Assembly: GCF_021869535.1 (NCBI RefSeq)
Contig: NW_026262701.1
Span: 102,114,001 to 102,178,000 of the forward strand
Origin: Mytilus californianus
Taxonomy: Eukaryota
Direction of reading: 5' to 3'
DNA length: 64,000 nucleotides
Part shown: positions 26,061 through 61,160 of the stretch, one piece after another
How the letters are laid out: each line of letters starts with the position of its first letter
How positions within the stretch are numbered: the first letter of the stretch is position 1
Translations under genes and position numbers: made by a program
Notes under the pieces: generated by a model
Seen by the model: the letters and a program-made list of their open reading frames with translations, nothing else
What the model was told of the DNA's origin: nothing
Databases searched by the model: none

Positions 26061-28815
26061 ACATATGGCCACCCTTAATTCCGACAGACACTATTTACAA
26101 CATATGGCCACCCTTAATCCCGACAGACCCTATTTACAACAAGATAAGATAAGATAAGATAAGATATTTTATTTCCAATTATGGGCCCCAAAGGGCATAA
26201 ACATTACAACATCAATAATTTTTTCATAATACAATACAAACAATGAGATAAAAAAAAAAAAAAGTTAAACGAGAACTATTTAAGTTCTTAAAGAATACGT
26301 AGATAAAGAATCTATAGTATGTTGTTTTTTTTAATACTAATGCATTTTATTGCAAGTGTGGTTGATATAGATAACAAACAAGCAGCCCAAAAAGAAAAAA
26401 AGAAAAATAGATATCCACATATGTATAGTACACAAAAAGTTGGATCAATTAAATATATAATAATTAGCCAAAAAGAAAGTAGAAATTAAACATGTCCATG
26501 ACTCATCCTGTGTCAGCAGCAAATAGGAAAGCATTATGGTTTCCTAAAGGCAGCTGACACCAGGGGGCGATACCTTATGGGCCATAGGCATGTAAAATGT
26601 GTGTAAATGTCTCTTTCCTACCTGTATCAAAAGCAAACAAGGAAGCATCATAGGTAACTTGAATGCAGTTGATACCAGGGGACGATGCCTCAAGGATATA
26701 AGAGAACATTTGAATAAATAATATATCTTAACAATTATTTTTTTTTTTAATCGGCTAGTATGTTTGTGATATTCAGATGAATATAATTTTCTATGTCCAA
26801 TCAAATGTATATACACACATAGATTTCCTTTAACTAATCTTCACTAAGGAAGATGTTTGTATATAAAATTACATATTATTTTAAGTAACTCAACATTTTC
26901 TACACTAAATAACCAGATAATTTTGCTTTGACTGTTCATATGATTAAAATAAGAATTATATTGTGCAATACTAGCTAACATACAATTTCTATCATCCTCA
27001 AATTTGTTACAATCAAATAGAAAATGAGCCTCATCTTCGACAGTATTGGAAGAACATTTATTACATATTCTGTTAATTCGGGGAATACCCTGATATCTAC
27101 CTAATTCTATTTGTAATCTATGAGAAGATACACGTAATTTAGTAAAACTTCTTCTAAGTTCAAAATTCTTGATCAATGTTAGATATTTTTCAAAACCAAA
27201 ATTTGTTTTATATAAAAGGTAGGTTTTCAGTTTACTGTCTGAAAATTTATCTATTTGTTTTTTCCAACAGCTAATAAACAATATTGATAGCTTGGTTTGT
27301 ATATATTTCTTAAATTTGTATAAGGATTCACAAAATGGAGCATTTATGGCATTTGTATAGTCAATACCAAGTATTTTAAAAACAACATTTATTGAACCAT
27401 ACCATGATGTTATATTCATGTGATGTAGTGTCTTTGATTGTGTATATGCCTCTTTTAATAGAGGAAAATTATTACCTAAATTCTCTAATCTATACCAGTA
27501 CAATAACATTCCTTTTATAATATTAAAATATATTGGAAATCTTCCAAGTTCAGATAACACGGCAGCATTTGTTGTTTTCTTGTGTACCCCAAGTATAAAT
27601 TTACAAAATTTTATATGAAGTTTCTCACAGGGTAAACCTGAATATAATTTTTCAAAAGATATATCTTCCTTCTTACATTTAGAGGAAAGAGAATTAAACA
27701 TCCCCCATATTTCGCTACCATATAATAAAATAGGTTTTACAGTGTGGTCAAAAACATGAATACTTGTTTTTACATCAGGATTAAGTGATAAAAGATCTTT
27801 CCTTAATTTGAAATGAGCTTTCAGGGATTTTTTGTATAGTTCATTTTGAGCATAACTGAATGAACCAGATGAGCTTAAATATAAACCTAGGTATTTGTAT
27901 TTTGAAACACATTCCAGATTTATATTCTGAAATGTGAATATCTGTTTTACATGTCTGCCTGCCTTGTTGAAAATCAGCACCTTTGTCTTATTAGTATTCA
28001 CATTGAGACACCAATCTTTGCAAAATTTATCAAGCATTCCCAGCTTTTCTCGTAGTCCTTCAGCTGATGTAGATAATAAAACAATATCATCAGCATACAT
28101 TAAACAATGTAGATCTTTGTCATTGACATTAACTGGGTCTCTAGTATCTGACAAATATCTGGGCAAATCATTTATGAATATCTTGAATAAATTCGGACTG
28201 AGGTTGTCACCTTGTTTGACTCCAATATCTAATGGGAAAAAATCACTTACTTGATTTTGAATTTTGACACATGATTTGCTAATTTCATACATACTTTTAA
28301 TAATGTTATAAAAATAAGACCCAGCCCCAATATCTAGTAGTTTAATCTTGATCCCTGTATGTATAACAGTATCAAAAGCCTTCTGAAAATCAACAAAACA
28401 GGCAAACAGTCTACCTTCTTTTGAATTACAGTATTTGTTAATAAGACAGTTTAAAATAAACATATGATCTGCAGTTCTGGCTTTCCTTGTGAATCCAATT
28501 TGACTATCATGTATAATATTATGTTCCTGAAGAAATTTGAACATATGGCCACCCTTAATCCCGACAGACCCTTTTTACAACATATGGCCACCCTTAATCC
28601 CGACAGACCCTATTTACAACATATGGGGACCCTTAATCCCGACATACCCTATTTACAACTTATAGCCACCCTTAAATCCCGACAGACCCTATTTGCAACA
28701 TATGGCCATCCTTAATCCCGACAGACCCTATTTACAACATGTGGCCACCCTTAAATCCCGACAGACCCTATTTGCAACATATGGCCATCCTTAATCCCGA
28801 CAGACCCTATTTACA
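26061..28815. repeat. 39-bp minisatellite (ACATATGGCCACCCTTAATCCCGACAGACCCTATTTACA) split by the LINE
   Basis: Two units at 26061/26100; seven units from 28541 to ~28815. Confidence 0.92.
26141..28540 (-). mobile_element. 5'-truncated non-LTR retrotransposon (RTE/RTE-X-like) with intact 566-codon RT ORF and (ATCTT)5 tail
   Basis: FVDFQKAFD, GVKQGDNLSP.LF, MYADD, YKYLG and C-terminal SHRLQIELGRY..RICNKC..EDEAHFLFDC; AATAAA followed by an (AAGAT)5 run on the + strand at 26141-26165. Confidence 0.92.
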
Positions 28816-32094: not shown

Positions 32095-34445
32095 AAAAAG
32101 AGAGACGAAAGATACCAAAGGGACATTCAAACTCATAAGTCGAAAATAAACTGACAACGCCATGGCTAAAAAAGAAAAGGACAAACAGACAAACAATCGT
32201 ACACAAAACACAACAAAGAAAACTAAAGACTGAGCAACACGAACCCCACCAAAACTGGAGGTGATAGCAGGTGCTCCGGAAGGGTAAGCAGATCCTGCTC
32301 CACATGTGGCACCGTCGTGTTGCTAATGTTAGTACAAACCCGGTCATAAGCCTAACTCGGTAGGTCACAGTCAGGAAAAGGTGATGGGATTGTAGTTACG
32401 ACATTAGGAACATATCCGCTATCATCTGTGAAACGGATATTCTGTAACGGTCAACCAACTCGTGATGGCGTCCGTAAAATTTACGAAGGGATAATTTCAA
32501 CTTCACCACTCGGAACTCTTGGTTTAATAGCTTCCTTGTGAGCAGCAACCCTCTATCAAGGAAATCATGATAGGAAATACAAGCCCTGGAGTATCGTATC
32601 AACTGGGAGATATATACTTTGTATGCAGGCGCTGCTGGAATGTTGCTACATAAAAATGGAAAGTTCACAATTGTGAAGCTGAAATCATCTCTTTTGTCAT
32701 AAAGTTTTGTTTTCAACCGATCCTCATTGTCAATTTCTGGATGTAAGTCAAGATATGAGGCAGACTTAACTGTGTCTGTTGTATCCTTTATCTCAAATTC
32801 GATGGGATAGATGCGTTCAACATAGTCACCAAATTTTGAATTATTTAGTGAGAGAACATCATCTTTGTAGCGGAAAGTAAAGTTAAAGGATACTGCTAAC
32901 TTCTTTTCTTTCTTCCTAAGAAGTTCCTGTATGAAGTCAGCCTCATATGAATAAAGGAACAAGTCGACAAGAAGAGGGGCACAGTTGTTTCCCATGGGAA
33001 TGCCGAATGTTTGTTGATAAACACGTCCTCCAAACGTAACAAATATGTTGTCAATCAAGAAATCAAGCATCTTGATGATGTCAGTTTCAGAGAATGTTTT
33101 GATAGGATCAGAGCGATTTTTTACAAAGTAGGATTTATCCCTCCCCTTATAAGACAAGATACTTGTATCTACGTTGGCCATTTTATTATGAAACAAAGCA
33201 GGACCAACTCTTTCAATTTGTCTTTTAGTTTGGAATGGGGAATATTTGTGTAAAGTGTAGAAAAGTCAAATGTTTTAGTACTATTGCAAGATGAAAGAGT
33301 CTTAGATTGTATGTACTCTAAAAGATCTTTGGAATTTTTTAGTATCCACATCTGATTCACGCCACCTCTAGAATAGGTAGTTTCACAATAACTTTGAAGC
33401 CCGGCTTTGATTGCTGATGAAATTGATGTTAATAATTTAAAAAGAGGTTTCCTGGAGCACTTGGAAGACCCAGCAATATACCGTTGTTTGTAAGGACACT
33501 TATGGAGTTTAGGTATCCAATACAGTGATGGAAGATCCAGTTCTTCATCTTTGGTTGAAATTCCAAAGGAACATAGAACAGACCTATGATTATCCAGGAT
33601 TTCCTCTTTAGTAAGTGTCGTGGGGTATATGTTTAGTTTCCAAGTGAATTGTCAATACCTAATTCATTTATCAAGCAGTTTATGTAATGTGATTTACACA
33701 CAAAAACGATGTTGTTTGGGGATTTATTTGCGGGGACAACAACATATTTGTCATGGAGGTAAGACAAGTGTTTAGCAACATTTGGGTCTTTAAAGATTGA
33801 TGTAGCATGGGTATTAATAGACCGTTTCAGTTTCTTAATTCTGATTTGTATTAACGACCTCACAGCCTTAATCCATTCGGAGAGAGTATCTACGTCTTCT
33901 TTGTCGCGTTTAACCCATTGCCTGGCATAATCCTTGACTGAATCCATCAGTATTTTGAAGTTGTGTTTCCAATTGATGGATTTAGGCTCACGATATTTCG
34001 GGCCTTTGGATAACACATTTCGCAGAGAAGTGTTATTGACAATGTTAAGTTCACCAGTAATAACGTGGCCAGCCGGATTATATATGAATGGGGAACTAGC
34101 ACAGGTGCAATCAGGAGTAGACTTAAAGTCGTCAATATTGAGATCCTGCAAGGCGTGTTTGTAATTGAAAATTTTAGTTGCAATTGGTTTGGTATAGGTA
34201 TAAGAAATGATAGATACAGACTGATCTTTGAAATGAGAGGTATTTTCGAATGAACTAATTTATGACGAAGGATATTGCCCAAGTTGATGGCATCGAGACC
34301 TTTGTTGGCAAAAGACAGTTTAAGAAAGGATCTTTTCTCTTTTTTATCTTTTCCAATGCGATCTGGTTTGGAAAGTCTGTGACTTGCAAACTGATGAGTT
34401 CAGGGAAAAAAGCACTACTTCGCGACATAATACGACTTCACCCTG
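32095..34445 (-). mobile_element. 5'-truncated, degraded Penelope-like retroelement, Naiad type (family 1)
   Basis: RT motifs VVVPANK, YWIPKLHK, TFDFSTLYTNIPH, GIPMG..CAP and FRYKDD. A CxC linker (PDCTCASSPF) lies upstream of the RT and no endonuclease follows it, which is the Naiad domain order. Frameshifts and a premature TAA at 33633; 3' UTR ~32095-32395. Confidence 0.88.

Positions 34446-36406: not shown

Positions 36407-36441
<35 letters not shown>
36406..36441. repeat. (TGTC)n microsatellite upstream of the alpha-kinase-like exon
   Basis: About eight TGTC units. Confidence 0.9.
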
Positions 36442-36549
36442 TCAAGACTATGCTGTGTTTGTAAAAATTTGGGACATGACGGAAACTGAATTTTCAGGAA
36501 AAAATACATGCAATAACAAATTGACTATTTAATTTTATTATTTCAGAAA

Positions 36550-39500
36550 ATGGGTAAATGGGATGTGATACAGTGGACAAGGAAATCAACAAACAGTTTA
36601 CGTGATAAACAACCAGTAAATTCCTGCTTTGGATTATATCCCCAAGTATATACGCCTACAAAATTAGTATACAAGGCTGCAATAATCTGTAATGAATTTG
36701 AAAAACCGGAAGTAGGTGTCGTCAAAGCTAGGCGATACAGACCAGGGACAGAAAGATACTGGCAGGGAGAATTGGATCAAAATCGCTATGCGCATCAAGT
36801 AGCAACCGCATTTACAGATCAAACGCTAGCTGCTAGAATAGAAATCGTGGACCAATATCTAGCACCACTCCATAGACAAACAAGTTGGGACAAAGTCTGT
36901 CTAAAACTAAAACCCCGTTATTTCAGACAGTTGTTGAAGTTCGAAATTGTGTTACTTGAAGAGGTTGTGCGAGATCTGAAGCCCTTCAAAAAGGATAAAG
37001 TTTTAGAAGCGTTTTCTCATTTTTCATATTCAGAAAGCAATGGTGAAAATTTGTTGTATGCATTTCAAGGCAACCGATTAGATGAGGGAATATATCTGCT
37101 GTTAACACCAGACATGTTAACTCATAAGTACGATATTCACAAATGGTTCCAAAAACACACATGTAATGACATTTGTGGTAAATTTAAAAAGCCATCTAGT
37201 ATTACTGAAACCGTTAATCCCATGAATATTCCAACCGACAATATGTTCTTTAACTTTCAAAACGATTCACGACCACCGAGCTACGAAGACGATATGTCCA
37301 GAGAAGCGCCAAACGAAAAGAGTAATGAGCATGCTAACCTAGAAACTACTTTTGGCGCTAAATCTTGTGATGGGTCATTTTCTGTCGTCACTGCATTAGT
37401 GCATTCCGACAGTTTGGGAAAGGATAAACCTTTGTTGAAAGAACAAACAAACAATCAGGTTGGAGAAAAATCCGTACTGACAACAGAGCAGTTACCAGTC
37501 GAGCAAAATCAAGCAGCTCATATTGACAAAGAAAGTGACAACGTGAATGTTTCTGATCAAGATTGCCTGGACGGGAGAGATAGTCTCATACATGATACTG
37601 GACCGACGGGTATCAACCTTTGTAGATTTAAAAATTTGGACGAAGATAAGCAAAGGAAAAAGACTATTTCTTTGAAAAGCGAAAACTTCCCTGGAAATGA
37701 CATTGAAGAAATAGAGGTAGGCAACTACGACATGTCTAGTTCAAAGTTTGAAGCAACAACTCTTGTGATGAGACCAAACTTTTATTGTTTAAATGTCAGT
37801 GATATTAAAAATGAAGATAAGTTGAACAGTACCGATGATAATGTGGATGTAGAAAAAAATGAACAAAATGCAAAAGTTTCCGTGGAAAATTGTTTCGGTG
37901 ATGAAGAAATTCCAAGATATGTTAACAGCTCCAGTAGAGATATAGTAACGTCATCACCATTGCCTAGTCCGAATGTGGCAAACGAAAATGATCCATCACA
38001 ACAATATATCTCCGAGCAGGAATATATCTCCAAACAGAATTCCACATGTCAAGAAAGTAGTCCGAAGTTAAGGCAACAAATTATATCTGAAGAGCATTGT
38101 CCGACTGACAATTCTGGAGATTCTGATGTGACACAGAACTATACTGAAAACAGTGAAGTAACAGTTTCTTCCAAATTATCATGTGAATCTGAACAACCAA
38201 CAGATTTTCAAACAAGCGTTTCATCTGTACAGCAACTGCCATGTCAAAATATAAATAAAATTTCACAACCAGAAATCATATCTATATGTAGTCATAATGA
38301 ACAAGATACGTATCAATCGCAACAACGGGATGAATTCCTAGAATATAAGCCTGTTGTCACTGAAGAATGGAATTCTTATTCTAATACATATTGTGAAATA
38401 CAAAATGTGGGAAATATTTCTTTGCCAACGACAGAGATCTCATCTTCGACTTCGATAGAACCAAACACATCTGACCTTGACATTTCGAATGATAGCACAC
38501 TAAGCTCCTTAGAGATGTTTGCGAGAAATTACATCATACCTGAATATGATGATAACCAAAAAAATAATTCAAATGCATGTTTGTCAATGGATTTAAAGGA
38601 AACAAATGAAGAATTGAGTACAGAGGTCACAGAAAATGTGGAAAATAGCAATACAGATGAAACAGGAGTGGAACGTATTTGTGACGAGCGCGACAAATCA
38701 TCTCCAAACACAGGAACAAATGTAGCTTTAGCAAACAACGCACTTCTTGTGAAAGAAGAACCGGAAATATCATCTACAGCAATAGAATTACAAAATAACT
38801 GTATTCATCCAATACCTACTGACTGTGCAAATTTGTCGGAAAAGGAGAGAAAAGAACCAATTTCTTTCCTTGACGAAAACGAAATTAAAGAAAACCCCGT
38901 AGAAACAATGGATCGTGTAGATTTAATGGAAAATGATAAGACCGAGCAAAATTCTTTTCTAGACAATGATGATAACGATGTACAGAAATTACTTGATGTA
39001 CAGAAGTTACTTATATCAACCTCGGATAGCGCTGATTCGATGGAAAAGGAAAAGAACGAACGCAACTCCCGTCTCAACAGCGATCCTCATAAACCATCCA
39101 ACCCAGAATTTTTGATAAAATACAATTTACACGAGTTTGTTGATCCAAACGAAAACGTAAGCTATTTTCAGTCTCCAAATTCTACTCCTGTGTCGATACC
39201 AACCACTTCAGATGTATCAGACCAAACAAGTTCACCACAAGTAAAAATTAACGAGGCAGAAGTACTTCCATTTCAACGACAAAAGCCGCTTACATCCTCA
39301 CTGCGTTCAAGTAAACAAAAACACAAGGCCAAAAGCGTTAAATTTGCAGATGATATAAATGTTGGGACGAGAAACAATATCATTGAACAGCAAACAGAAA
39401 ATAATCTGGGACAAAAACCACAAACCATGTCACCAGTGATAAAAATCACAACGTCAGATTCTACAGAAACAAAAAGTTTAGAGCCTATCAACTCGGTGGA

Positions 39501-39567
39501 TGCAAACTGGCATTCACATATTCCTTGTGAATGTTGCGACAACCAAAACATAACAGGACGAGACTGA
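36550..39567 (+). CDS. Alpha-kinase-fold protein (predicted pseudokinase), 1005 aa: N-terminal ~210-aa domain plus long acidic Ser/Thr/Asn-rich disordered tail
   Basis: Uninterrupted 1005-codon ORF. Motifs VVK(59), AFSHFSY(154-160), xFQG(172-174) and HTCNDIC(203-209) match the alpha-kinase family; ATG is 3 nt after a tttcag acceptor (36546). Confidence 0.88.
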   Translation: MGKWDVIQWTRKSTNSLRDKQPVNSCFGLYPQVYTPTKLVYKAAIICNEFEKPEVGVVKARRYRPGTERYWQGELDQNRYAHQVATAFTDQTLAARIEIVDQYLAPLHRQTSWDKVCLKLKPRYFRQLLKFEIVLLEEVVRDLKPFKKDKVLEAFSHFSYSESNGENLLYAFQGNRLDEGIYLLLTPDMLTHKYDIHKWFQKHTCNDICGKFKKPSSITETVNPMNIPTDNMFFNFQNDSRPPSYEDDMSREAPNEKSNEHANLETTFGAKSCDGSFSVVTALVHSDSLGKDKPLLKEQTNNQVGEKSVLTTEQLPVEQNQAAHIDKESDNVNVSDQDCLDGRDSLIHDTGPTGINLCRFKNLDEDKQRKKTISLKSENFPGNDIEEIEVGNYDMSSSKFEATTLVMRPNFYCLNVSDIKNEDKLNSTDDNVDVEKNEQNAKVSVENCFGDEEIPRYVNSSSRDIVTSSPLPSPNVANENDPSQQYISEQEYISKQNSTCQESSPKLRQQIISEEHCPTDNSGDSDVTQNYTENSEVTVSSKLSCESEQPTDFQTSVSSVQQLPCQNINKISQPEIISICSHNEQDTYQSQQRDEFLEYKPVVTEEWNSYSNTYCEIQNVGNISLPTTEISSSTSIEPNTSDLDISNDSTLSSLEMFARNYIIPEYDDNQKNNSNACLSMDLKETNEELSTEVTENVENSNTDETGVERICDERDKSSPNTGTNVALANNALLVKEEPEISSTAIELQNNCIHPIPTDCANLSEKERKEPISFLDENEIKENPVETMDRVDLMENDKTEQNSFLDNDDNDVQKLLDVQKLLISTSDSADSMEKEKNERNSRLNSDPHKPSNPEFLIKYNLHEFVDPNENVSYFQSPNSTPVSIPTTSDVSDQTSSPQVKINEAEVLPFQRQKPLTSSLRSSKQKHKAKSVKFADDINVGTRNNIIEQQTENNLGQKPQTMSPVIKITTSDSTETKSLEPINSVDANWHSHIPCECCDNQNITGRD

Positions 39568-42500
39568 AGAGGATATTACTTTTAAACCAATGCAGTAGAA
39601 ATTTTACAGGAAATTATTCAATGCGCACATTGGTTCGGTTCCGTGTAAATAAATAATTTACCTCGATGTTAAACACATCTTTACCAGATTTTAAGCTTTC
39701 TTATTTCTATGGCGAACCAAAAATGAGCAGGTTTTACGAACTGGTTCCTTGACTGGATTAATCAACACCGTAGATATATATACGTGTGATACTGATTTAA
39801 GCAATAACCTTTATCAGGTTTGCCTGGGACCAAAGTTTTGGCACTGACTTATATTTAGCAAAAGCAGCTTAAATTGTTTAATGGTTCACCAAACTTAAAA
39901 GTAAAAATTGTAAGTAAACTTGAACACACAAAAAAAGTTCAAAATTTAGAACACGTTATGGACCAAAGCTAGTCGTAGGCTTCAAATGTAGTTCAACGGC
40001 AAAAAAAATTAAAAATACCGTATTTCTATTCAACTTTGGTATCATGGTTCTTGGGCTGGATTGCTTAATAATTTCAAACGACGAAAATAGTGTTGTTGTA
40101 TTTCCTATTTATAGATTGGATTACGTAAACAACGTCAAGTTAAAAACATAATATTATTATGCAATTGTAAAAAAACAAAAACAAAGATGTATATCAAAAT
40201 GTTATTACATAATTACAACTGAAATTAATTATTATTTTATATGCATGTCGTGCAGTGCAATTAATTATGTAAACAAAATCAAGTTGGTAGTTTTCCCAAT
40301 CCGTGCAAATTTCCTAGCGGATGGTTGGTTAAACAGTTGGTTATGTTACAGAGGATACAGAGTTATTTTTTTAATAAATTATTTTATTTGGAGGGGGGCG
40401 GTATTTTTTTTGGTCATTTTTCAACTTGTACGCAATTTTTGTATTCCTTTCTTTTATATAAAGTAAATCAATGTTAACATAAATTAGGCTTAATACAAAA
40501 TCTGCAGCCAGTTCACCATTTGTAAAATGGCTATATTTACTTTAGTGCAGCAGAAGCCGATTTTTCAGAAGTAATTATTTGTTAATGTATTTCGTATATC
40601 GTTATGAAATTCAAGATTACTGCGATAATTAGATTCAGCTTTGAACAAAACATTATGGGTAGAAAATAAATTTCAACTTCTCAAACGCTATTCACAAAAT
40701 AAATAAATATAGTTGTGGAGAGGACCGCACAAAGACAAGAAAGACTGTCCAAGAGCGGGTATGTGGGCCGTTAGTGAGAAATCTATAATATCAGAAAATG
40801 GTCCTTTACACAAGTATACAATTGCATTTATTTTGTGAGAAACTGAAAAAATATTGAATACAAATTTGTATTAAAATCAAACGGTCCTTAATTTTCTTTA
40901 AGGGGGTAGGGTCAATTTTCACTCACTTGGTCAAAATCTAAAACGTGTCAAATCCTATTGGATTTTGAATATTAAAGAGTCTGAATTATATACAGAAAAC
41001 AAGTCTCAAAATTTTTACGTTTTCATAAAAACAAAAATTTATTCGGCGCTACATGTTGCTGTCGAAGGCAACTTGATACAAAATTGCAATTTTTTCAAGT
41101 TTTTGTTAAATTTCGCATCGAATGACGTTTCTAACCAAAATAAATTTACTTGTGTTAAATCTGCAATTTATCGCTCTACTTTAAACATAATTTTTGTTTT
41201 AGCTAGGGATGTCCTTCATAAACATTTTTTTTAAATACATACTATAAATGGACCAAAATCTGTCAAAATTGCTGTTTGAACTATATTTAGATGATTTTTA
41301 CTTAGATCAAGACAAAAAGATTTTTTGAATATGGGCCGGGTGTGAAATAAAATAAGGGGAAATTGGCTCCGCGTTGAAAGCCGTACTTTAACCTATAATT
41401 GTTTACTTTTTACACATTGTGACTTGGATGGATAGTTGTCTCATTGGCACTCATACCACATCTTCTAATTTGTATCTACCAGTCTGTTTACGTTTGAAAA
41501 TATGTTAAAGTTTTATACTTTAAAATTTTAAATTAATGAAAAAAACAAGTCACACAAATTGATACAATGAGCAATAACTGTATATTTGTTTTATGTGATA
41601 TGATTATTTTTTTCTTAATTTACTGCTTAGAATTAAAAAAAAAAAAACTATACGTCTAATTGTTTGTGATTATTTAAAAAAAATCATAGCAAAAAGGGTA
41701 GAAGAATTTTCTTTGTCAGAGATTTTCTCTATATATCTAATTATGATTTTGAGGATATCGGACATTTTTTTTTTTTACCCTACTGTTCTATTTTTAGCCC
41801 TGTCGACCATGTTGGTTGATTGGCAAGGAAAATAAATCCCTTTTTACAAAAATACCCTTGAAATTATTCAACCCAAGTTCGGTTTCAATTGGTCAAGTGG
41901 TTTAAAGAAGATTTTTAAACGCTTACGACGACGGGCGCCAAGTGATGGGAATAACTCATTACACCCATTGAGCTAATGAGAAGTTCGCATTTTCCTGTTT
42001 TATACGTTTTTCTTAAAGGTTTCAATAGCAGCAATACATGGTCACCGATTCCACCATAATGAAAAGCGAGAATTTACGCCAACGGGACAGCAACAGGTAT
42101 AGCCTTCTTTTAAAACGAATATGGTCCTGGTTTCTATGATGAAATTTATGGAAGAGCCAAATTAAATATTTTTTTTCAGCGACGGTGGTCATCATCAGCG
42201 ACAAATGTCATTGTATAGAGAGTGAATGACTCTGGAAAGCAAAATAATATAACTAGACCTGGTGACACCTGTTAAACAATGGTGATATTAGGTTTCCAGA
42301 TTTATAGTTTTTATCGCTGCTCAATTATGACCCTTGCACTGTTGGACATCGTAGTCATGCACCTTATCTCTGAATGTTCCGACTGTCACTGTCACAAGAA
42401 TTGACAATTTAAATGGGATTGCTTGATGGTGACGGTCAGATCAAGTGTCGAATAGGTATCGATCGGCTGACTATACGGTATGGGTTTTGTACATTGTTGT

Positions 42501-42895
42501 AGACTGAACGGTGACCTAAAGTTGCCAACATCTACGTTATTTTTTGTTTTTTTTGCGGATATCAGTAGTTGGCTCATTGGCAAGCATAACACCTCTTCTT
42601 ATTTTTATATAAGGTCCGTTTGAACATAGAATTGTTTCATGAAAATATGTGTTTGCTGACAACAATAACGAATAACAATATGCAGGTCTCCATTATCCGT
42701 TTGAAAACCCTGGTTTAATAAGAATTTCGCAGAAAATATTACGCAACAATTAAATCGCATTTGAACAAAGACGTTACAAGTTTGGAAGACATTAACATAT
42801 TATGACAGACAAACAGAGGTGTAATAATAATAATAAAAAACAAATGCATATTGTAACTAAATAATACTGGTATGTAAAATATATTATTTTATCTA

Positions 42896-44662
42896 TTACG
42901 AGGCTATTGTAGCTTGTTTCCGCAAAGATTTTTTTGACTTAACTTTCTTTTCACTGACACTGTCATTACATTTCGGAGATTCCGCTGCTGCAATGCCGGA
43001 TGAATATATGCTAGATTCCCGCAATGAAGTGTTAGGGAGTTCTTGTGTGTCTGAAAGTTTTTCTGATTCATTCTTATCTAAATGAGGTACTAAAATTACT
43101 TTTTCAGGTTGACTTTCAGGTGTATCGTTTATTTGTTCAGTTGACCTTTCTCTCAGATTTGATATTGGAAACATTTGCTCTTTGTTCACAACTTTAGGTA
43201 ATCTATCGGGTAGATATTGTACACTGTTACTTTCCTGAACAGGTTTTTCATGTAATTTTAACTTAGGGTCTTGTTTCTCTTTAACCGCTATTTTGGACAA
43301 ACGCAACCTCAGCTCATCTTGAACGGCCATCTTTTGAACACCATATTTATCGTCGGTATCATTTTCATTGTCTATCCTTTCTTGTTTCTTTAATTTTGGT
43401 TTTGGTTTGATTTCAGGCTTTGGTTTCACTTCGGGTTTTTGTTTGATTTCCGGTTTCGGCTTGATTTCCGGTTTTTCTGTCGATTGTGCGTTCATCTTTT
43501 TTGGCATCCTCACATTTTGAACGACCATAGTTTGAACTCTGATCGGTCTATTCTTTGTACTTGGTGAACTATGTTCAGTGTTAGTCCGTTTTAAAACATG
43601 AACATGTGAATCAGATCGATCCTTTCGGATGGCATTGTCAATATATGGTACACTTGATCGTTTAACTGACCCGTGCCTCTCTTTTTCGTCGTGTTTTTTA
43701 AGCGAACCTCGTCTCACTTTTTCATCATGTTTATGTACTGACCCCCTCCTTCCTCTTTCATCCTGTTTTGGATCTTCATGAACATAAACGGCATGCATAA
43801 TAGTGGTCACTTTTTTCTTCGATGAAGATGCCGACGATTGTTCCTGTGGTGGAGCTGATGGATTTCTCAAAATTCCAGGTGACCGGTGTGGAATTTTAAT
43901 CTGTGAAGTGTGTTCACCGGGTTCTTGAACTCGTACAGATGTTTGTCGTTGTAGTTTTAAATGCTCGCTAGGTACATGGATATCAAATAATGGTGTTTCT
44001 GTGGTAATCTTGACATCAGGCTTGCTCCAGCCAACGCACAAATCATTACAAACATGGTCGTCGAAAAATTCATTAATTTCCTTCTGTTTCTGTAATATTT
44101 TGGGAGTTAGTAAGTGGTATTCGTTGCCGCTTTTTACACCTTTGAATATGGCGATAACAGACTGATGATTTCCTTCTATAAATGAAAAATGAGAAAAGGC
44201 ATCTAAAATGATATCTCCTTCGAAGAAAACCATTGTATCCGAAAGTAAAGGTTCAATTAGCACTATTTCATCTTTTTTAAAATCGCGAAAATCGTACTGT
44301 TTCATACTCCGACAAAATTTATCCCAACGAGAATATCCTTTTAAAGGGGCAAGATATTGCTGAACAAACGTGATTTTTCCAGCCCCAGTTTTATCTGTAA
44401 AAGCACTAGCTACACCAGCAGCATGAGTATTTGAATCTAAACGAGACTCCCAGAACTGCTCCGTTCCTGCTCTGAATCTCCTGAATTTAACAATTGCTTT
44501 CTTTGGTTTGTTTAAATGTTCACCATACATAACAGCATCATAAACAAGTTGTGTGTACGTTATATCTTTGGGATAAAACCCAAAGCAAGCCCATACCGAG
44601 GGTTCGTCGTCTTTATTCTCCAACGATGCCTCAGTAAAGTGAACTATATCAAATATGCCCAT
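42896..44662 (-). CDS. Paralogous alpha-kinase-fold protein (predicted pseudokinase), 588 aa, with basic/Pro-rich disordered tail
   Basis: ORF 42896-44725, but the likely start is the ATG at 44662, 3 nt after a ttttttgcag acceptor. Motifs IVK(59), AFSHFSF, IFKG and HVCNDLC(203-209); 62/137 ungapped identities to the 36550 protein by hand count. Confidence 0.88.
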   Translation of the reverse strand: MGIFDIVHFTEASLENKDDEPSVWACFGFYPKDITYTQLVYDAVMYGEHLNKPKKAIVKFRRFRAGTEQFWESRLDSNTHAAGVASAFTDKTGAGKITFVQQYLAPLKGYSRWDKFCRSMKQYDFRDFKKDEIVLIEPLLSDTMVFFEGDIILDAFSHFSFIEGNHQSVIAIFKGVKSGNEYHLLTPKILQKQKEINEFFDDHVCNDLCVGWSKPDVKITTETPLFDIHVPSEHLKLQRQTSVRVQEPGEHTSQIKIPHRSPGILRNPSAPPQEQSSASSSKKKVTTIMHAVYVHEDPKQDERGRRGSVHKHDEKVRRGSLKKHDEKERHGSVKRSSVPYIDNAIRKDRSDSHVHVLKRTNTEHSSPSTKNRPIRVQTMVVQNVRMPKKMNAQSTEKPEIKPKPEIKQKPEVKPKPEIKPKPKLKKQERIDNENDTDDKYGVQKMAVQDELRLRLSKIAVKEKQDPKLKLHEKPVQESNSVQYLPDRLPKVVNKEQMFPISNLRERSTEQINDTPESQPEKVILVPHLDKNESEKLSDTQELPNTSLRESSIYSSGIAAAESPKCNDSVSEKKVKSKKSLRKQATIAS

Positions 44663-47600
44663 TACCTGCAAAAAATATGCAAAGGTTTCAAGAGATGGAA
44701 AATATATGTGAACTGTCATATTCATAGATCACGGACCCCCTTTTCCCTCCAATATACACACATTTCTTTTAATTCAATTATATATTACCTTGCTGACTCA
44801 GTCAATAATTCATTTTGTATTCGTGTTAAATATTAAGTCAAGTGTAGGACAAACACTGCTTTATCTTTTTAATCTTAACATTAAAATCATTGTGGATCTT
44901 CTATCGAACCATTTCTGCTGAATTAAATGGGCATGGTTACATGTAACTATCTTTTTACTTAAAATCACCATTTCGTATGATTTTTTTTTTATCTTAACTG
45001 CCCATCGCAAGGGTTATCCATTCGAAAACGGTATAGTTTTTGTTTACATTCAGGATCAAAATGCGCGAGCTTATGAAACCATGTGGAATTGGAATATTGG
45101 AGGGTATAAATAATATACTTAAAATGTTTTACAACGATTTTTCAGATATCCCCCCAAAAAATCAAATTGTTTATCATAAAGCGCTATAACAATGACATGT
45201 TTTAAAATACTTTATATATTTTGCATCGGAAAGACTACACCTATATCTTTACTTTTGAAGGAATTGGAATTTAGATTCTCATTCATTCTCATTGGTTATT
45301 TTGACAAATAATGAAAATTAACCGTAACGTTTTAAAATTGCGGTTTTGGGGCCATCTTTGAGCACTCGTGATATGGTTTCATGTTCATATTATACAAGAC
45401 ATAATGCTACTAAAACACAAAATAAAAATAATATAAAATTAGAAGATATGGTATGATTAGCCGATGAGACAACTATCCAAAGTTAATGTTTGAAGTTATC
45501 ATAGGGTAAAATCTTATTAAGTCGAAGAAGTTTTTTGAAGATGGTCATTGTGGGAAATAAATTCAGGGACATGTGTCCTACTTCTTACATATATACTGTG
45601 ATATAATTTTCCTTTCAAAACACGTGGTAAATTGACAAATTCCAAAGTAGATAAAAGTGTTTGTTTTTGCCCATTATTTAAAAAATATTTAAATTTAAAC
45701 AGGTTTTAAGTCCCCACAGAATTTCACAATGTAAAATAGTCGAAGCTTATTGATAAAATGGATACAAACGAAATCCCCAACCATTTGAATCTTGCACTCA
45801 TAATTCACTGTTCACATTTCTGCGGAAATTGGTGATAATTCTACATGGAAATATTTGTAAACGGGTTAAAACCAATAATCCTCATGATATATAATAACCC
45901 GTTTGGGATATATTATTCCTTTGGGGGTATACATTTACTGTTCGAAGGCTATTGTGATTTCGGGGGAACGATTTCAAAATGCTGTAAATTTAATAAAAGG
46001 CAACAACTTTTCTGGATACATTATACTGTTAATCAAATAAATTCTTATGAGAGATGAGAGTTGTTACCATGGTTACTATGAAAACAAAATTTACAACAAA
46101 TTTAAATATTTGGCGCTAGAAGTATAAGCTGTTTTATCTGTAACACGAAATGATATTTGCGCATTCATCTTTGATAAACCTGAACTAAATTGACCCTCTG
46201 CAATTCAAGAATCAAAACGGACAGTGGAACTATACCCACTAATCAGCTATAATCCACAATTTTCTACATAAGGAAATTCCTGTACCAAGTCAGGAATATG
46301 ACAGTCGTTTTCCATTCGTTTGATTTGTTTGAGTTTTTGATTTTGCCATTTGAAAAAGGACTTTCCGTTTTGAATTTTCCTAGGAGTTCGGTATTTTTGT
46401 TATTTTACTTTTTATACATATTTTGCATCAGAAAAGTTAACATACTCATCTCTGAAAACAGTAAAATTGAGAGTCATCAGCTAAGAGTACATGCCAAGCG
46501 GCTTCCAACACAGAGACCGTCCATCCTAAGAATTTATAACCAGCGTCAGAGGCTTATATAGAGTAAGAAAAGAGCATCATTGACCAGCGCCAAAGGCTAT
46601 ATATAGAGTAAGAAGAAAAAAGTATCATTGACCAGCAATCCATCAACTTCATCAAAATTAGATATATTACACCTCAGTCTAGATTTGGAAAAAGGGTAAT
46701 TTGGTTTTTAATTTGAAATACACCTCAGTCTAGAATTGAATTGTGTGACAAATACCAGTCAAGACAGATTACGCGAGCCACATTTGTTCAATCTTTGGGC
46801 TACAGGTATCCAGCTAAAACTGACTTGTGATGACTACACGTATCCTATATGTTTTTAGAATTTTAACTTTTAGCTGTATATATATATATATGAATGTGCT
46901 ATGTTTTGGATATGAAATAACTTTTAAAATTATAACCGGTGTATGACTTTTAGTCATATAACACCAAAACTCTAATGTTATGTTTATAATACGCAAATGT
47001 CATGTACAAAAAGCGCAAACATTCCGCGCCGTAAATATTGTTTGCACTGTAAATTTATATCCAAAAAAGGGTTAGTCCAACCATAAGAGTACATCATTTA
47101 AGGAAGGTAGGTTAGAATTTCTTTCTGTTTTGCTTTTTTTTTATAAAAAATACCGAAACTTTAGGGCAGGCATTTTGAAGCATTAAATAATAGGGTAGGT
47201 ATGGTACCCTGCGTTATTTATAACTCATTAGGGGGTTTGGTCCTAGCTTGTTGTAAAGATAAAAGAGATCCGGGTTGCTAAAACTAACATAAACGAATTG
47301 ATTTGTTGCTCACAATTCTATATAGTGTGTACGATTAAGTTAACATAGGAGGGCCAGTATAAGTGCAATATTGAAATCAAGTGTATGTTTACTAGTTTTC
47401 AGCGTGTCGCAATTATTTAAATTTTATGTCCCCACGTGAGAAGTGATTTTGATTGATTGATTGTTGCTTGCTTAATGTCCAGTTACAAATATTTCATGCA
47501 TATCCAGGACAAGACCGTCACAGTTATTTAGGAGTAATGTTAACATTACATGTTACATTAAGTCTGACAACACTGGTATTCAGACAGAATGTACGTCCTG

Positions 47601-55962: not shown

Positions 55963-57515
55963 TAAAATTGAGAATGGAAATGGGGAATGTGTCAAAGAGA
56001 CAACAACCCGACCATAGAACAGACAACAGCAGAAGGTCACCAACAGGTCTTCAATGCAGCGAGAAATTCCCGCACCCGGAGGCGTCCTTCAGCTGGCCCC
56101 TAAACAAATATATATACTAGTTCAGTGATAATGAACGCCATACTAAACTCCAAATTGTACACAAGAAACTAAAATTAAAAATAATACAAGACTGACAAAG
56201 GCTAGAGGCTCCTGACTTGGGACAGGCGCAAAAATGCGGCGGGGTTAAACATGTTTATGAGATCTCAACCCTCCCCTATACCTCTAGCCAATGTAGAAAA
56301 GTAAACGCATAACAATACGCACATTAAAATTCAGTTCAAGAGAAGTCCGAGTCTAATGTCAGAAGATGTAACCAAAGAAAATAAACAAAATGACAATAAT
56401 ACATAAATAACAACAGACTACTAGCAGTTAACTGACATGCCAGCTCCAGACTTCAATTAAACTGATTGAAAGATTATGTCTTCATCATATGAATATCAGG
56501 CACAATCCTTCCCGTTAGGGGTTTAGTATCATACCATCATAACATATATGAGAAGAACATAACCCGTGTCATGCCAACAACTGGTTTTTAAATAAATGTG
56601 TTTAGTGCCGATGCAAAGACCCTATAAGTGAATCAATATTAACGCCAAAATATGCAATCTTTAATGACCTGACAACAGTATCGTAACTATATCCCTTCTT
56701 AATAAGTCTATTTAAAGGTTTTGTTAGCTTCAGAGGTGAATACTGACATTTTTGTGCTTTATAAAGAATATTTCCATAAAAATTGGATGTGAAATACCTG
56801 AACGTATAAGAAGTCTGCATGTTGAGCTATATTTACGAATGATGTCCTTATACCGATGATAAAATTTAATAAATGTTTTGACTAGTTTGTGATATCGAAA
56901 ACCCTGGTGTAATAATTTTTCAGTAATACATAAATTTCTCTCGTTAAAATCTAAAACATTGTTACATACACGAGCGAATCGTACAAGTTGAGATATATAA
57001 ACACCGTAAGATAGTGACAAGGGAACGTCACCATCTAAAAATGGATAATTAACGATAGGAAATGAAAAATCATCTCTTTTATCATATATTTTAGTATTAA
57101 GCTTTCCGTTAATGATATAGATATCAAGATCGAGGAAAGGGCAGTGGTCATTGTTGGTATTAGCTTTATTTAAAGTAAGTTCAACAGGATACATTTCTTT
57201 AGTATACATACTGAAGTCGTCATTATTGAGAGCCAAAATATCATCCAAATATCTAAAAGTATTATTAAATTTGTGTATCAGATGTTGTTTCGATGGGTCT
57301 TTGCTGATTTTTGTCATAAATTGTAACTCATAGCAATACAAAAAAAGGTCCACAATAAGTGGTGCACAGTTAGTCCCCATTGGAATTCCGATAACCTGAC
57401 GATATACGGAATCTCCAAAGCGAACAAAAATGTTATCTAGTAAAAATTCAAGGGCATATATAGTATCAAAGCATGTCCAATTGACATAGTTTTTTTGTTT
57501 ATTGCTACTAAAAAA
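55963..57515 (-). mobile_element. 5'-truncated Penelope-like retroelement (Naiad-like family 2), copy B, inserted in the 35-bp satellite
   Basis: RT C-terminal half (GIPMGTNCAP, FRYLDD, YDKRDDF, SYGVYISQL), one frameshift near 56740, no C-terminal GIY-YIG, ~640-bp 3' UTR ending ...ccattctcaatttt. Confidence 0.88.
56486..56550 (-). promoter_or_regulatory. Form-2 SECIS-like element in the 3' UTR of Penelope-like copy B
   Basis: Sense strand: helix I ATATG/CATAT, core ATGAT...TGAT, 11-bp helix II GGTATGATACT/AGGATTGTGCC (one A-G mismatch), unpaired AAA, apical mini-helix CCC/GGG. Confidence 0.72.
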
Positions 57516-60500: not shown

Positions 60501-61160
60501 TTTGTCAAAATGTTACATAGGTACATGTTTCTGGGTTTGTCAAAATGATACAACAGTACATGTTTCTGGGTTTGTCAAAATGTTACAAAAGTACATGTTT
60601 CTGTGTTTGTTAAAATGTTACAAAAGTACATGTTTCTGTGTTTGTCAGAATGTTACAAAAGTACTTGTTTCTGTGTTTGTCAGAATGTTACATAGGTACA
60701 TGTTTCTGGGTTTGTCAAAATGTTACAAAATACATGTTTCTGTGGTTGTTAAAATGTTACAAAAGCACATGTTTCTGTGTTTGTCAAAATGTTACAAATG
60801 TATATGTTTCTGTGTTTGTCAGAATGTACTTAAGCACATTACAAATTTACATGTTTCTGTGTTTTTCAAAATGTTTCAAAAGAACATGTTTCTGTTTGTC
60901 AGAATTTCACAAAAGCTCATGTTTCTGTGTTTTGTCAGAATGTCACAAACGTACATGTTTATGTGTTTGTCAGAATGTTACAAAAGTACATGTTTTGTGT
61001 TTGTCAGAATGTCACAAAAGTACATGATTCTGTGTTTGTCAGAATGTCATGAAAGTTCAAATTTCTGCTATTTTTTTTAATTTCATAATGCAAAAGATAC
61101 CTACTGTGATTTGTAATATTTATAGAATAAAGAATGAACACTATACTGTTGATTTTACAG

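What the first reader, a model, noticed from the sequence alone, without database searches (positions are those of the whole stretch)
36550..44662. Pair of alpha-kinase paralogues with the same catalytic lesions and an intact zinc site: a candidate alpha-pseudokinase family
Seen: both ORFs are intact and align almost without gaps over ~210 aa (K59, H203, C205 and C209 carry the same numbers; 62/137 identities by hand). Established: active alpha-kinases (eEF2K, MHCK, TRPM7) need a Gly-rich GxxR loop, the catalytic Asp of DLQG, the Mg-binding Asp of LTDP and a GxxNLG-type loop, and bind zinc through the His of AFSH plus HxCNxxC. Here DLQG reads AFQG in one gene and IFKG in the other, TDP reads LTP in both, the P-loop reads TPTKLVY / TYTQLVY, and the KYNxN and GxxNLG segments are missing from both. 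The lysine and all four zinc ligands are kept, and both carry a shared WDKxC..FR insert. Inference: activity was lost before the duplication and the fold has since been kept for a non-catalytic (scaffold or sensor) role. I do not recognise this as a described family, and it is my best candidate for a new system in the window.
Basis: partly seen in the sequence, partly recalled or inferred. Interest (0 to 1): 0.78.

Follow-up and report, generated by a model that had tools for sequence, protein, structure and literature searches.

The report
Mussel pair of dead alpha-kinase genes
Two neighbouring mussel genes encode proteins that keep the zinc-stabilised alpha-kinase fold but have lost every residue needed to transfer phosphate. 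They are conserved and transcribed, and they belong to a large, apparently undescribed group of similarly crippled alpha-kinase-like proteins found across molluscs.

Summary
Gene A (36550-39567, +) and gene B (42896-44662, -) are intact, convergent, single-coding-exon genes in a Mytilus-type genome. Each begins with a ~215-residue domain that passes the Pfam Alpha_kinase cut-off, and the two domains are 39% identical (E 9e-55).

An AlphaFold model of A (pLDDT 88) matches only alpha-kinases strongly (Z 11.7-16.7). The invariant Lys, the hinge Glu and all four zinc ligands are kept. Both invariant Asp residues, the P-loop Gly/Arg and the Gly-rich substrate loop are lost.

- **Fixed and selected:** the lesions are present in all nine more distant orthologues, and domain dN/dS is 0.06-0.18.
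- **Transcribed:** stranded RNA-seq shows both genes transcribed from their own strands.

New here:
- The pair is the most reduced branch of a large radiation. Of the best 146 relatives, 89 lack one or both Asp, and every named one of these is a mollusc.
- The nearest kin are an oyster pair that also lack both Asp, so the loss predates the duplication.
- The "WDKxC..FR insert" is not an insert relative to close kin.

Vertebrate ALPK3 is already published as an alpha-kinase pseudokinase, so this is a new variant of a known kind. The most likely role is a non-catalytic scaffold, but this is untested. The scan had not noted this before.

The parts
36528..36546 (+). Gene A: polypyrimidine tract and AG splice acceptor, 3 nt before the start codon. 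The 5' UTR therefore lies on an upstream exon.
   Evidence: Sequence reads ...ttattatttcag|aaaATG. The same acceptor sits 3 nt before the ATG in genomic contigs of A orthologues L002 and L003. The transcript-like contig L004 carries different sequence joined directly to aaaATG.
36550..39567 (+). Gene A: single coding exon, 1005 aa plus stop.
   Evidence: Intact ORF. Orthologues P0006-P0009 are 63-94% identical in the domain. In stranded RNA-seq run X21 the reads over 39001-41400 come from one strand only, opposite to the strand seen over gene B.
36550..37194 (+). Gene A: alpha-kinase-like domain (aa 1-215) lacking the catalytic residues.
   Evidence: Pfam PF02816 37.5 bits. AF2 model pLDDT 88, pTM 0.83. 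Foldseek: the top 44 hits are all alpha-kinases. VIA-align Z 11.7-16.7, against at most 6.9 for other kinases. dN/dS 0.06-0.18.
36724..36726 (+). Gene A: K59, the retained invariant ATP-phosphate lysine.
   Evidence: It aligns to the VVK/fvlK lysine of MHCK-A and the Entamoeba alpha-kinase in the profile alignment. It is invariant in all 11 mytilid sequences and present in 70 of 76 relatives.
37060..37062 (+). Gene A: A171, at the position of the catalytic Asp (MHCK-A D756; the D of DxQG).
   Evidence: phmmer aligns A's 'yAfqG' with the engineered D756A chain 4zs4 'vAiqG'. The PDB title calls that mutant inactive. Wild-type MHCK-A has D at this position in the profile alignment.
37105..37107 (+). 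Gene A: T186, at the position of the Mg-binding Asp (MHCK-A D766; the D of TDP).
   Evidence: LtTP aligns to LtDP of 4kuj and tDP of MHCK-A. T186 and P187 are invariant in all 11 mytilid sequences. The D766A structure 3lmi is titled inactive.
37018..37176 (+). Gene A: zinc-module ligands H157 (37018-37020), H203 (37156-37158), C205 (37162-37164) and C209 (37174-37176).
   Evidence: H157, C205 and C209 are invariant in 76 of 76 relatives, and H203 in 75 of 76. They align to AFSH and HxCNxxC of MHCK-A, TRPM7 and the Entamoeba kinase.
37195..39564 (+). Gene A: 790-residue acidic tail with no recognised domain, probably disordered (pI 4.4, net charge -75), containing short conserved islands.
   Evidence: No Pfam match. 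Tail dN/dS is 0.30-0.40. Conserved islands are visible in the orthologue alignment.
39331..39354 (+). Gene A tail: conserved K/R-x-V-K-F-A-D-D island. It matches the RVxF-type PP1-docking consensus and is a candidate only.
   Evidence: It is the only match to [RK]x(0,1)[VI]{P}[FW] in each of the five A-clade tails, always at the same aligned place. B has none.
39517..39564 (+). Gene A: conserved C-terminus HIPCECCDN-x-NITGRD.
   Evidence: 15 of 16 residues are identical in all five A-clade proteins, despite saturated dS between them.
39568..41400 (+). Gene A: long 3' UTR (approximate end).
   Evidence: X21 coverage continues on the same strand to about 41400. One X1 contig runs from the coding sequence to 40367. 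Coverage is essentially absent over 41600-42400.
42600..42895 (-). Gene B: 3' UTR (approximate).
   Evidence: X21 reads on the B strand start at about 42600. Contigs in X1 and X6 begin at 42728 and 42719.
42896..44662 (-). Gene B: single coding exon, 588 aa plus stop.
   Evidence: ORF. Orthologues P0001-P0005 are 72-96% identical in the domain. X21 reads over this exon come almost entirely from the strand opposite to that seen over gene A.
44018..44662 (-). Gene B: alpha-kinase-like domain (aa 1-215). I172 sits at the catalytic-Asp position (44147-44149) and T186 at the Mg-Asp position (44105-44107). K59 (44486-44488), H158, H203, C205 and C209 are kept.
   Evidence: Pfam 26.3 bits. 39% identity to A. 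Alignment to 4kuj. Residue table. dN/dS 0.05-0.08.
43398..43475 (-). Gene B tail: K-P-E-I-K-P type repeat (18-nt period). This repeat is the likely reason for NCBI's 'triadin-like' name.
   Evidence: TRF finds period 18 with 4.3 copies. Copy number differs among orthologues.
43772..43816 (-). Gene B tail: conserved island KKVTTIMHAVYVHED.
   Evidence: K284-H295 are invariant in 11 B-clade sequences.
44666..44680 (-). Gene B: polypyrimidine tract and AG acceptor, 3 nt before the start codon. The upstream in-frame ATG at 44725 is therefore intronic.
   Evidence: Sequence reads ...atattttttgcag|gtaATG. A contig in run X5 diverges from the genome at 44667. An acceptor lies 3-5 nt before the ATG in L001, L005 and L008.

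Best explanation
A and B are a mytilid-specific pair of paralogous genes. Each encodes an N-terminal, zinc-stabilised alpha-kinase fold that can no longer transfer phosphate, followed by a long tail with no recognised domain.

**Shown here**
- The domain has the alpha-kinase fold.
- Lost: both invariant Asp residues, the Mg-binding Gln (kept only in the window's A and its closest orthologue P0006), the P-loop Gly/Arg, and the Gly-rich loop that alpha-kinases use to recognise substrate peptide.
- Kept: the ATP lysine, the hinge Glu and all four zinc ligands.
- The lesions are fixed in all orthologues, and the domain is under strong purifying selection.
- Both genes are transcribed.
- The loss is older than the A/B duplication, and older than the split from oysters.

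**Inferred**
- The domain now works as a non-catalytic binding module. It may bind a protein partner, possibly an active vwkA-like alpha-kinase or one of its substrates, or it may bind nucleotide without turnover.
- The tails act as scaffolds carrying short linear motifs.
  - A pairs a basic domain with a very acidic tail that holds one conserved RVxF-like (PP1-docking type) motif and a conserved Cys-rich C-terminus.
  - B pairs a neutral-to-acidic domain with a basic Lys/Pro-repeat tail.
- The reciprocal charge pattern is conserved across orthologues. It suggests that the two proteins either bind each other or serve opposite classes of partner.
For: **Fold**
- Pfam Alpha_kinase is above its cut-off for both proteins.
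- The AF2 model has pLDDT 88.
- All 44 significant Foldseek hits are alpha-kinases.
- VIA-align gives Z 11.7-16.7 with rmsd 2.8-4.3 over 177-204 residues. The next unrelated kinases score at most 6.9.

**Lesions**
- A carries Ala exactly where the engineered D756A mutant does.
- PDB titles call the D756A and D766A mutants inactive.
- The review PMC2827801 names the Lys and the two Asp as invariant catalytic residues, and the GXGXXG loop as the substrate-recognition loop.
- The two loop deletions are measured.

**Fixation and selection**
- NG86 dN/dS for the domain is 0.106, 0.179 and 0.065 on unsaturated pairs. The tails give 0.19-0.40.

**Age of the loss**
- The careful ML tree puts A+B (100/99) as sister to the Asp-less oyster pair (99/96), inside an Asp-less radiation.
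- On that tree the Mg-Asp state needs only 4 changes.

**Expression**
- Stranded RNA-seq gives strand-specific coverage of both genes, with a silent gap between them.
- Contigs spanning the genes occur in three further studies.

**Tails**
- No Pfam domain is found.
- The charge pattern is conserved across orthologues.
Against: - No biochemical data exist. Several proteins once called pseudokinases later proved active through relocated residues or different chemistry.
- The ATP lysine and the hinge Glu remain invariant, which would also fit retained nucleotide binding or an unusual activity.
- The scaffold role, PP1 docking and A-B interplay rest only on motif and charge conservation. An RVxF-type pattern is expected about once by chance in a tail this long.
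- The full-length B model was uninformative (pLDDT 30), so tail disorder is inferred from composition and the lack of domain hits.
Confidence: 0.7

Rival explanations
1. The domain is still an enzyme. It could be a kinase using relocated catalytic residues or metal-independent chemistry, or it could have been repurposed for another nucleotide-dependent reaction.
For: K59 and the hinge Glu (E137) are invariant, and the fold is under very strong purifying selection. Conserved acidic residues lie near the AFSH motif: D149 is invariant and D153 nearly so in the mytilids. Such rescues are known from other kinase families (my own knowledge, not tested here).
Against: Five separate catalytic elements are missing together: both Asp, the Mg-binding Gln in most orthologues, the P-loop Gly/Arg and the substrate loop. 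Single Asp-to-Ala changes at either position are deposited as inactive MHCK-A. The replacement residues vary between clades (A, S, I, V, and G in oysters), which is the pattern of a position released from catalytic constraint.
Confidence: 0.15
2. The domain is a nucleotide or small-molecule sensor. It binds ATP, ADP or another ligand through the retained Lys/Glu pocket without turnover, and it switches the behaviour of the tail.
For: The Lys and hinge Glu are retained and the predicted fold is intact. Many pseudokinases keep nucleotide binding (my own knowledge, not tested here).
Against: The P-loop Gly/Arg and both metal ligands are gone, which should weaken triphosphate binding. No pocket analysis was possible because model coordinates are not exposed by the tools.
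Confidence: 0.1
3. The genes are decaying or functionless duplicates, or the lesions belong only to this haplotype or assembly.
For: Only the degeneracy of the motifs and the low-complexity tails point this way.
Against: The ORFs of 1005 and 588 codons are intact. The lesions are shared by nine orthologues, some with saturated dS. Domain dN/dS is 0.06-0.18. Transcription is strand-specific and seen in several studies.
Confidence: 0.02

Closest known systems
[quoted passage not shown]
   Same: Both have an alpha-kinase fold retained without catalytic activity. ALPK3 serves a scaffolding and localisation role, organising myomesin at the sarcomere M-band and the nuclear envelope.
   Different: ALPK3's case rests on four conserved residues that are variant only in ALPK3, three of them in the interlobe cleft, plus phosphoproteomics. 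The mussel proteins have lost both invariant Asp, the P-loop Gly/Arg and the whole Gly-rich loop. The mussel domain is N-terminal and followed by a tail with no other Pfam domain. The mussel proteins arise inside a mollusc radiation, so this looks like an independent origin. I did not compare the sequences with ALPK3 directly.
Dictyostelium MHCK-A alpha-kinase domain and its engineered D756A and D766A mutants (PDB 4zs4, 3lmi)
   Same: Same fold (Z about 15) with the same Lys and zinc ligands. Gene A naturally carries Ala at the D756 position.
   Different: MHCK-A is an active kinase with a coiled-coil region and WD repeats. The mussel proteins carry both substitutions at once and lack the GxGNLG loop and about 10 residues before AFSH.
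Entamoeba histolytica alpha-kinase (PDB 4kuj)
   Same: It is the best solved-structure match by profile (E 3e-33) and by structure (Z 16.7).
   Different: 4kuj keeps DIQG and LTDP. It shares only 13-16% identity with A.
Mollusc proteins auto-named 'alpha-protein kinase vwkA-like' or 'Alpha-type protein kinase domain-containing protein' (scallops, pearl oyster, rock oyster, Aplysia, Arion, Octopus, Argonauta, chiton)
   Same: They are the nearest sequence relatives. Most also lack one or both catalytic Asp. The oyster pair P0046/P0047 is the sister group.
   Different: Most are about 300 aa with little tail, and they keep the Gly-rich loop (median 25 residues against 15). The eight checked have no von Willebrand A domain, so the vwkA name is only a similarity label. 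None has been studied.

Membership tests
Alpha-kinase fold family (Pfam PF02816) | Match to the family profile above the curated cut-off | tested here: met
   37.5 bits (A) and 26.3 bits (B) against a cut-off of 21.3.
Alpha-kinase fold family (Pfam PF02816) | Three-dimensional fold of solved alpha-kinases | tested here: met
   A model with pLDDT 88 gives Foldseek E down to 9e-10 and VIA-align Z 11.7-16.7 to MHCK-A, TRPM7, eEF2K, ALPK1 and the Entamoeba kinase. B was not modelled successfully, but it is 39% identical to A across the whole domain.
Alpha-kinase fold family (Pfam PF02816) | C-lobe zinc module (the His of AFSH plus H-x-C-x-x-x-C) | tested here: met
   H157/158, H203, C205 and C209 are present in both proteins and invariant or nearly so in 76 relatives. 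Zinc binding itself was not measured.
Catalytically active alpha-kinases | Invariant ATP-binding lysine (K1648 in human TRPM7, per PMC2827801) | tested here: met
   K59 in both proteins.
Catalytically active alpha-kinases | First invariant Asp (D1767 in human TRPM7; D756 in MHCK-A) | tested here: not met
   Ala in A and Ile in B. Orthologues carry A, S, I or V.
Catalytically active alpha-kinases | Second invariant Asp, the Mg ligand (D1777 in human TRPM7; D766 in MHCK-A) | tested here: not met
   Thr in all 11 mytilid sequences.
Catalytically active alpha-kinases | Gly-rich GXGXXG-type loop near the C-terminus, used for peptide substrate recognition | tested here: not met
   15 residues between TP and HxC against a median of 25 in relatives. 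The loop motif is absent.
Catalytically active alpha-kinases | Phosphotransferase activity | not testable with these tools
   Needs recombinant protein.
ALPK3-type pseudokinase | ALPK3 architecture (Ig-like domains with a C-terminal alpha-kinase domain) and orthology to ALPK3 | tested here: not met
   The domain is N-terminal and no other Pfam domain is found in either tail. The proteins nest within a mollusc clade. No direct sequence comparison with ALPK3 was run.
vwkA (von Willebrand factor A alpha-kinase) | N-terminal vWA domain with a C-terminal alpha-kinase domain (PMC2827801) | tested here: not met
   No VWA match in A, B or the eight relatives scanned.

The most novel reading that the evidence does not exclude
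Molluscs carry a large, unnamed family of zinc-stabilised alpha-kinase folds that lost catalysis early and then diversified as non-catalytic modules. It would be a second, independent and far more extensive origin of alpha-kinase pseudokinases after ALPK3. Within it, the mytilid A/B pair would work together as an oppositely charged two-protein scaffold, for example with A recruiting PP1 through its VKF motif and B acting as a basic, phospho-regulated partner.
Probability: 0.25. Interest if true: 0.7.

Novelty: new variant of a known kind. Interest (0 to 1): 0.5.

Why it matters
Alpha-kinases are a small atypical kinase family, and only one member (ALPK3, 2022) has been argued to be a pseudokinase. 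This locus shows a much more radical natural loss of the catalytic machinery. Both invariant Asp, the P-loop and the substrate loop are gone, yet the fold and its zinc site have stayed under strong purifying selection.

The locus also led to a set of at least 89 sequence clusters, among the best 146 relatives, that lack one or both Asp. All the named ones are molluscs. If confirmed, this gives three things:
- a natural series for asking what an alpha-kinase fold does when it cannot phosphorylate;
- a correction to automatic names such as "vwkA-like" and "triadin-like" in mollusc genome annotation;
- a caution for kinome counts in molluscs.

It remains a sequence-based inference with no known phenotype.

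Tried and rejected
- **Single-sequence phmmer of either domain against PDB.** Hits were too weak to be significant (E 0.25-1.5). They were useful only for residue alignment. A 76-sequence profile was needed to get significance.
- **Full-length AF2 model of B from an 11-sequence alignment.** It failed (pLDDT 30), so nothing is concluded from it.
- **ESM Atlas searches.** Both were closed or gave no answer.
- **Conserved A-B adjacency.** In the 138-kb contig carrying the B orthologue P0004, no A-like gene lies within 10 kb on either side. In the oyster contig no second copy lies within 10 kb. Adjacency outside this genome is therefore not shown.
- **RNA-seq joints 41449/41455/41461 to 42585-42594.** I considered these as a 3' UTR intron of A. 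I judged them to come from a very high-copy repeat. The core at 41408-41466 has depth in the tens of thousands in contig runs, reads come from both strands, and extra letters sit at the joint.
- **Upstream in-frame ATG of B at 44725.** Rejected as the start, because it lies in the intron and all orthologues start at MG.
- **N-terminal myristoylation of the MG start.** Considered by eye only. The following residues do not fit the usual pattern as I recall it. Not tested.
- **RRGS repeats in the B tail.** They are confined to the closest Mytilus sequences, so they are not a family feature.
- **Literature searches for a description of this subfamily.** None was found. The oyster kinome paper only lists 'alpha' among nine atypical kinases. 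A Mytilus 'VwkA' transcript expressed in the larval shell field (PMC9283884) could not be linked to these genes.

Full report
**What is there**

The window is AT-rich animal DNA (GC about 0.29-0.37) with retroelement debris. The region holds two long ORFs in convergent orientation:
- Gene A, 36550-39567 on the + strand, 1005 aa.
- Gene B, on the - strand, with an ORF from 44725 down to 42896.

B really starts at the ATG at 44662, giving 588 aa. All orthologues begin MG at that point. The sequence just upstream reads tttttgcag|gtaATG, a splice acceptor 3 nt before the start codon. Gene A has the same layout, tttcag|aaaATG.

The same acceptor sits 3-5 nt before the ATG in genomic contigs of orthologues of both genes. 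Two transcript-like contigs carry unrelated sequence joined right before the ATG. A contig from run X5 leaves the genome at 44667. Each gene is therefore one coding exon preceded by a non-coding 5' exon. The shared intron position argues for a DNA-level duplication rather than retroposition.

**Organism**

The 90%-identity cluster of the nearest B relative contains RefSeq proteins of Mytilus edulis, M. galloprovincialis and M. trossulus. They are named "triadin-like" or "uncharacterized", and UniProt calls one an "Alpha-type protein kinase domain-containing protein". The window's B protein is about 90% identical overall to the M. edulis and M. trossulus entries. The window therefore comes from a Mytilus-type mussel. 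The genes are predicted in public annotation but carry no functional description.

**Checking the observation**

Both proteins pass the Pfam Alpha_kinase gathering score (37.5 and 26.3 bits against 21.3). No other Pfam domain is found in either tail. A and B align over 245 residues at 39% identity with five gaps, E 9e-55.

A 76-sequence alignment gave an AlphaFold model of the A domain with mean pLDDT 88 and pTM 0.83.
- In Foldseek, all 44 matches with E at or below 0.001 are alpha-kinases: MHCK-A, the Entamoeba kinase, TRPM7, eEF2K and ALPK1.
- In VIA-align, those score Z 11.7-16.7 (rmsd 2.8-4.3 Å over 177-204 residues). The next, unrelated kinases score 6.9 or less.

Residue-level alignments and position tables show what is kept and what is lost.

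| Element | State in A and B |
|---|---|
| ATP lysine (K59) | kept |
| Hinge Glu (E137) | kept |
| Zinc ligands (H157/158, H203, C205, C209) | kept |
| First invariant Asp (MHCK-A D756) | Ala in A, Ile in B |
| Second invariant Asp, the Mg ligand (MHCK-A D766) | Thr in both |
| Mg-binding Gln | Gln in the window's A and its closest orthologue P0006, Lys or Met in the other orthologues |
| P-loop Gly | Thr |
| Segment before AFSH | about 10 residues shorter than in relatives |
| Gly-rich loop | about 10 residues shorter than in relatives |

The review PMC2827801 names the Lys and the two Asp as the invariant catalytic residues. It describes the GXGXXG loop as the probable substrate-recognition loop and the zinc module as structural. 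PDB entries 4zs4 (D756A) and 3lmi (D766A) are titled as inactive MHCK-A. Gene A naturally carries Ala at the D756 position.

The WDKxC..FR stretch has 25 residues against a median of 23 in the nearest relatives. It is a variable region of the family, not a private insert.

**Are the lesions real and selected?**

Word-based searches found four A-type and five B-type orthologues, 63-94% and 72-96% identical in the domain. All lack both Asp: the A clade has A or S, the B clade has I or V, and all have T at the second position.

I took coding sequences from the encoding contigs and computed Nei-Gojobori dN/dS.
- Domain, unsaturated pairs: 0.106, 0.179 and 0.065. More distant pairs, where dS is near saturation, give 0.05-0.08.
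- Tails: 0.19-0.40.

The domain is therefore under strong purifying selection, and the tails are looser but still constrained.

**Expression**

One stranded raw-read RNA-seq run of the same organism was laid on 39001-45000.
- Reads over 39001-41400 (the end of A and a long 3' UTR) come from one strand only.
- Reads over 42600-44800 (B) come almost entirely from the opposite strand.
- Depth over 41600-42400 is essentially zero.

Three further runs from other studies hold contigs that span the B coding sequence (about 1.5 kb) and the 3' part of A. They have little or nothing in the gap, which is how transcript assemblies behave. Both genes are transcribed at modest, similar depth.

**The wider family, which is the main addition here**

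I ran an exhaustive HMMER search of 1.84 billion representative proteins with a profile of the mytilid domains. It found 222 proteins at E ≤ 0.001. After the mytilid sequences (above 300 bits) the next full-length hit scores 109 bits, so the pair is a long branch.

I aligned the best 146 hits to the profile and read off the two Asp positions:

| State | Hits |
|---|---|
| Lack both Asp | 71 |
| Lack only the second Asp | 16 |
| Lack only the first Asp | 2 |
| Keep both Asp | 47 |
| Do not cover the sites | 10 |

Among 76 full-length domains, the commonest residues are G or N at the first site and T or N at the second. The Lys (70/76), the Glu (71/76) and the zinc ligands (75-76/76) persist.

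Every representative lacking one or both Asp that carries a source name is a mollusc:
- Bivalves: Saccostrea, Pinctada and four scallop genera.
- A chiton: Liolophura.
- Gastropods: Arion and Aplysia.
- Cephalopods: Octopus and Argonauta.

The one named representative that keeps both Asp is from a sea star. Many representatives come from unnamed assemblies, so restriction to molluscs is not proven.

A careful maximum-likelihood tree (LG+C20, 76 rows) gives these groupings:
- the A clade (support 100/99);
- the B clade (100/96);
- A+B together (100/99, on a long stem);
- A+B as sister (99/96) to the oyster pair P0046/P0047, which has G and V at the two sites.

All of this sits inside a clade where no member keeps the second Asp. 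The Mg-Asp state needs only 4 changes on the tree, and the first Asp needs 10.

Three conclusions follow:
- The second Asp was lost early in this radiation.
- The first Asp was lost repeatedly.
- Both were gone before the A/B duplication. That duplication happened after the split from oysters and before the divergence of the mytilid lineages sampled.

The Gly-rich loop deletion is special to the mytilid clade, and it arose independently in a small cephalopod group. The mussel pair is therefore the most reduced form of the family.

**The tails**

Neither tail matches any Pfam family.

A's tail has 790 residues and is Ser/Asn/Glu/Asp-rich (pI 4.4, net charge -75). Its domain is basic (net +9). 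B is the reverse, with a domain at net -4 and a Lys/Pro-rich tail at net +22. This reciprocal pattern holds in every orthologue.

Short conserved islands stand out in otherwise fast-evolving sequence.

In A:
- NLETTFGAKSC;
- NPEFLIKYNL;
- a K/R-x-VKFADD island. It is the only match to the RVxF-type PP1-docking pattern in each A-clade tail, always at the same aligned place;
- the C-terminus HIPCECCDN-x-NITGRD.

In B:
- LKLQRQTS;
- KKVTTIMHAVYVHED;
- a KPEIKP repeat of variable copy number;
- QKMAVQDELR;
- the C-terminus KSKKSLRKQ.

These features fit disordered scaffold regions carrying linear motifs. The PP1 idea is a hypothesis only.

**Mechanism**

The best-supported reading (about 0.7) is that these are true pseudokinases. 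In this reading the alpha-kinase fold is kept as a zinc-stabilised binding module at the head of a scaffold protein.

Two alternatives remain:
- The fold is still an enzyme through relocated residues or different chemistry (about 0.15).
- The fold is a nucleotide sensor that binds without turnover (about 0.1).

Their main support is the invariant Lys and Glu. Decay or a haplotype artefact is excluded.

**Comparison with what is known**

[quoted passage not shown] That claim rests on four variant conserved residues plus phosphoproteomics (PMC9698156). The concept therefore exists already.

The mussel proteins differ in four ways:
- The degeneration is much more severe.
- The architecture differs, with an N-terminal domain and no other recognised domain.
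- The origin differs, lying inside a mollusc radiation.
- They are not vwkA proteins, because they have no vWA domain.

I found no paper describing the mollusc Asp-less group. The paper library is incomplete, so a published description cannot be ruled out.

**Verdict**

- Novelty: a new variant of a known kind.
- Interest is moderate. The value lies mostly in the family-level pattern, and everything about function still needs experiments.
- The scan's earlier notes contain no previous record of this locus or family.

Noticed in passing
window 41401-41600 (core about 41408-41466) and 42585-42610: A very high-copy, transcribed repeat. RNA-seq depth is about 80-100 on both strands, and summed contig depth reaches the tens of thousands. 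Reads join 41449-41461 directly to 42585-42594, skipping about 1.13 kb. This suggests that at this locus the repeat is split by an insertion, or that the reads come from other copies.
   Followed up: partly
window 26844-28544 (-): A 566-aa ORF with a reverse-transcriptase domain (RVT_1, 92.6 bits), probably a LINE-type retroelement remnant.
   Followed up: partly
window 32396-33196 (-), 33633-34151 (-) and 56730-57521 (-): The ORFs at 32396-33196 and 56730-57521 share motifs with each other (for example YDKRDDFSF..VN.PF) but have no Pfam hit, and the ORF at 33633-34151 also has none. They are probably parts of another retroelement family.
   Followed up: no
window 59397-61080 (+): Two adjacent ORFs of 243 and 267 aa built from near-identical internal repeats (MFLCLSKCYK...CFCVCQNV...). 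The one scanned (59397-60125) has no Pfam hit. This looks like a tandem DNA repeat that happens to stay open rather than a gene.
   Followed up: no
window 36407-36441: A perfect (TGTC)n microsatellite, 8.8 copies, about 100 nt upstream of gene A's splice acceptor.
   Followed up: no
relatives P0077, P0079 and P0103 (Argonauta and unnamed): A small cephalopod-type group of Asp-less alpha-kinase-like proteins has independently lost the Gly-rich loop and the segment before AFSH. This parallels the mytilid pair.
   Followed up: partly
relative P0175 (Octopus sinensis, 3296 aa): A giant protein with an N-terminal Asp-less alpha-kinase-like domain (G and N at the two sites). The first 1500 residues show no other Pfam domain.
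   Followed up: partly
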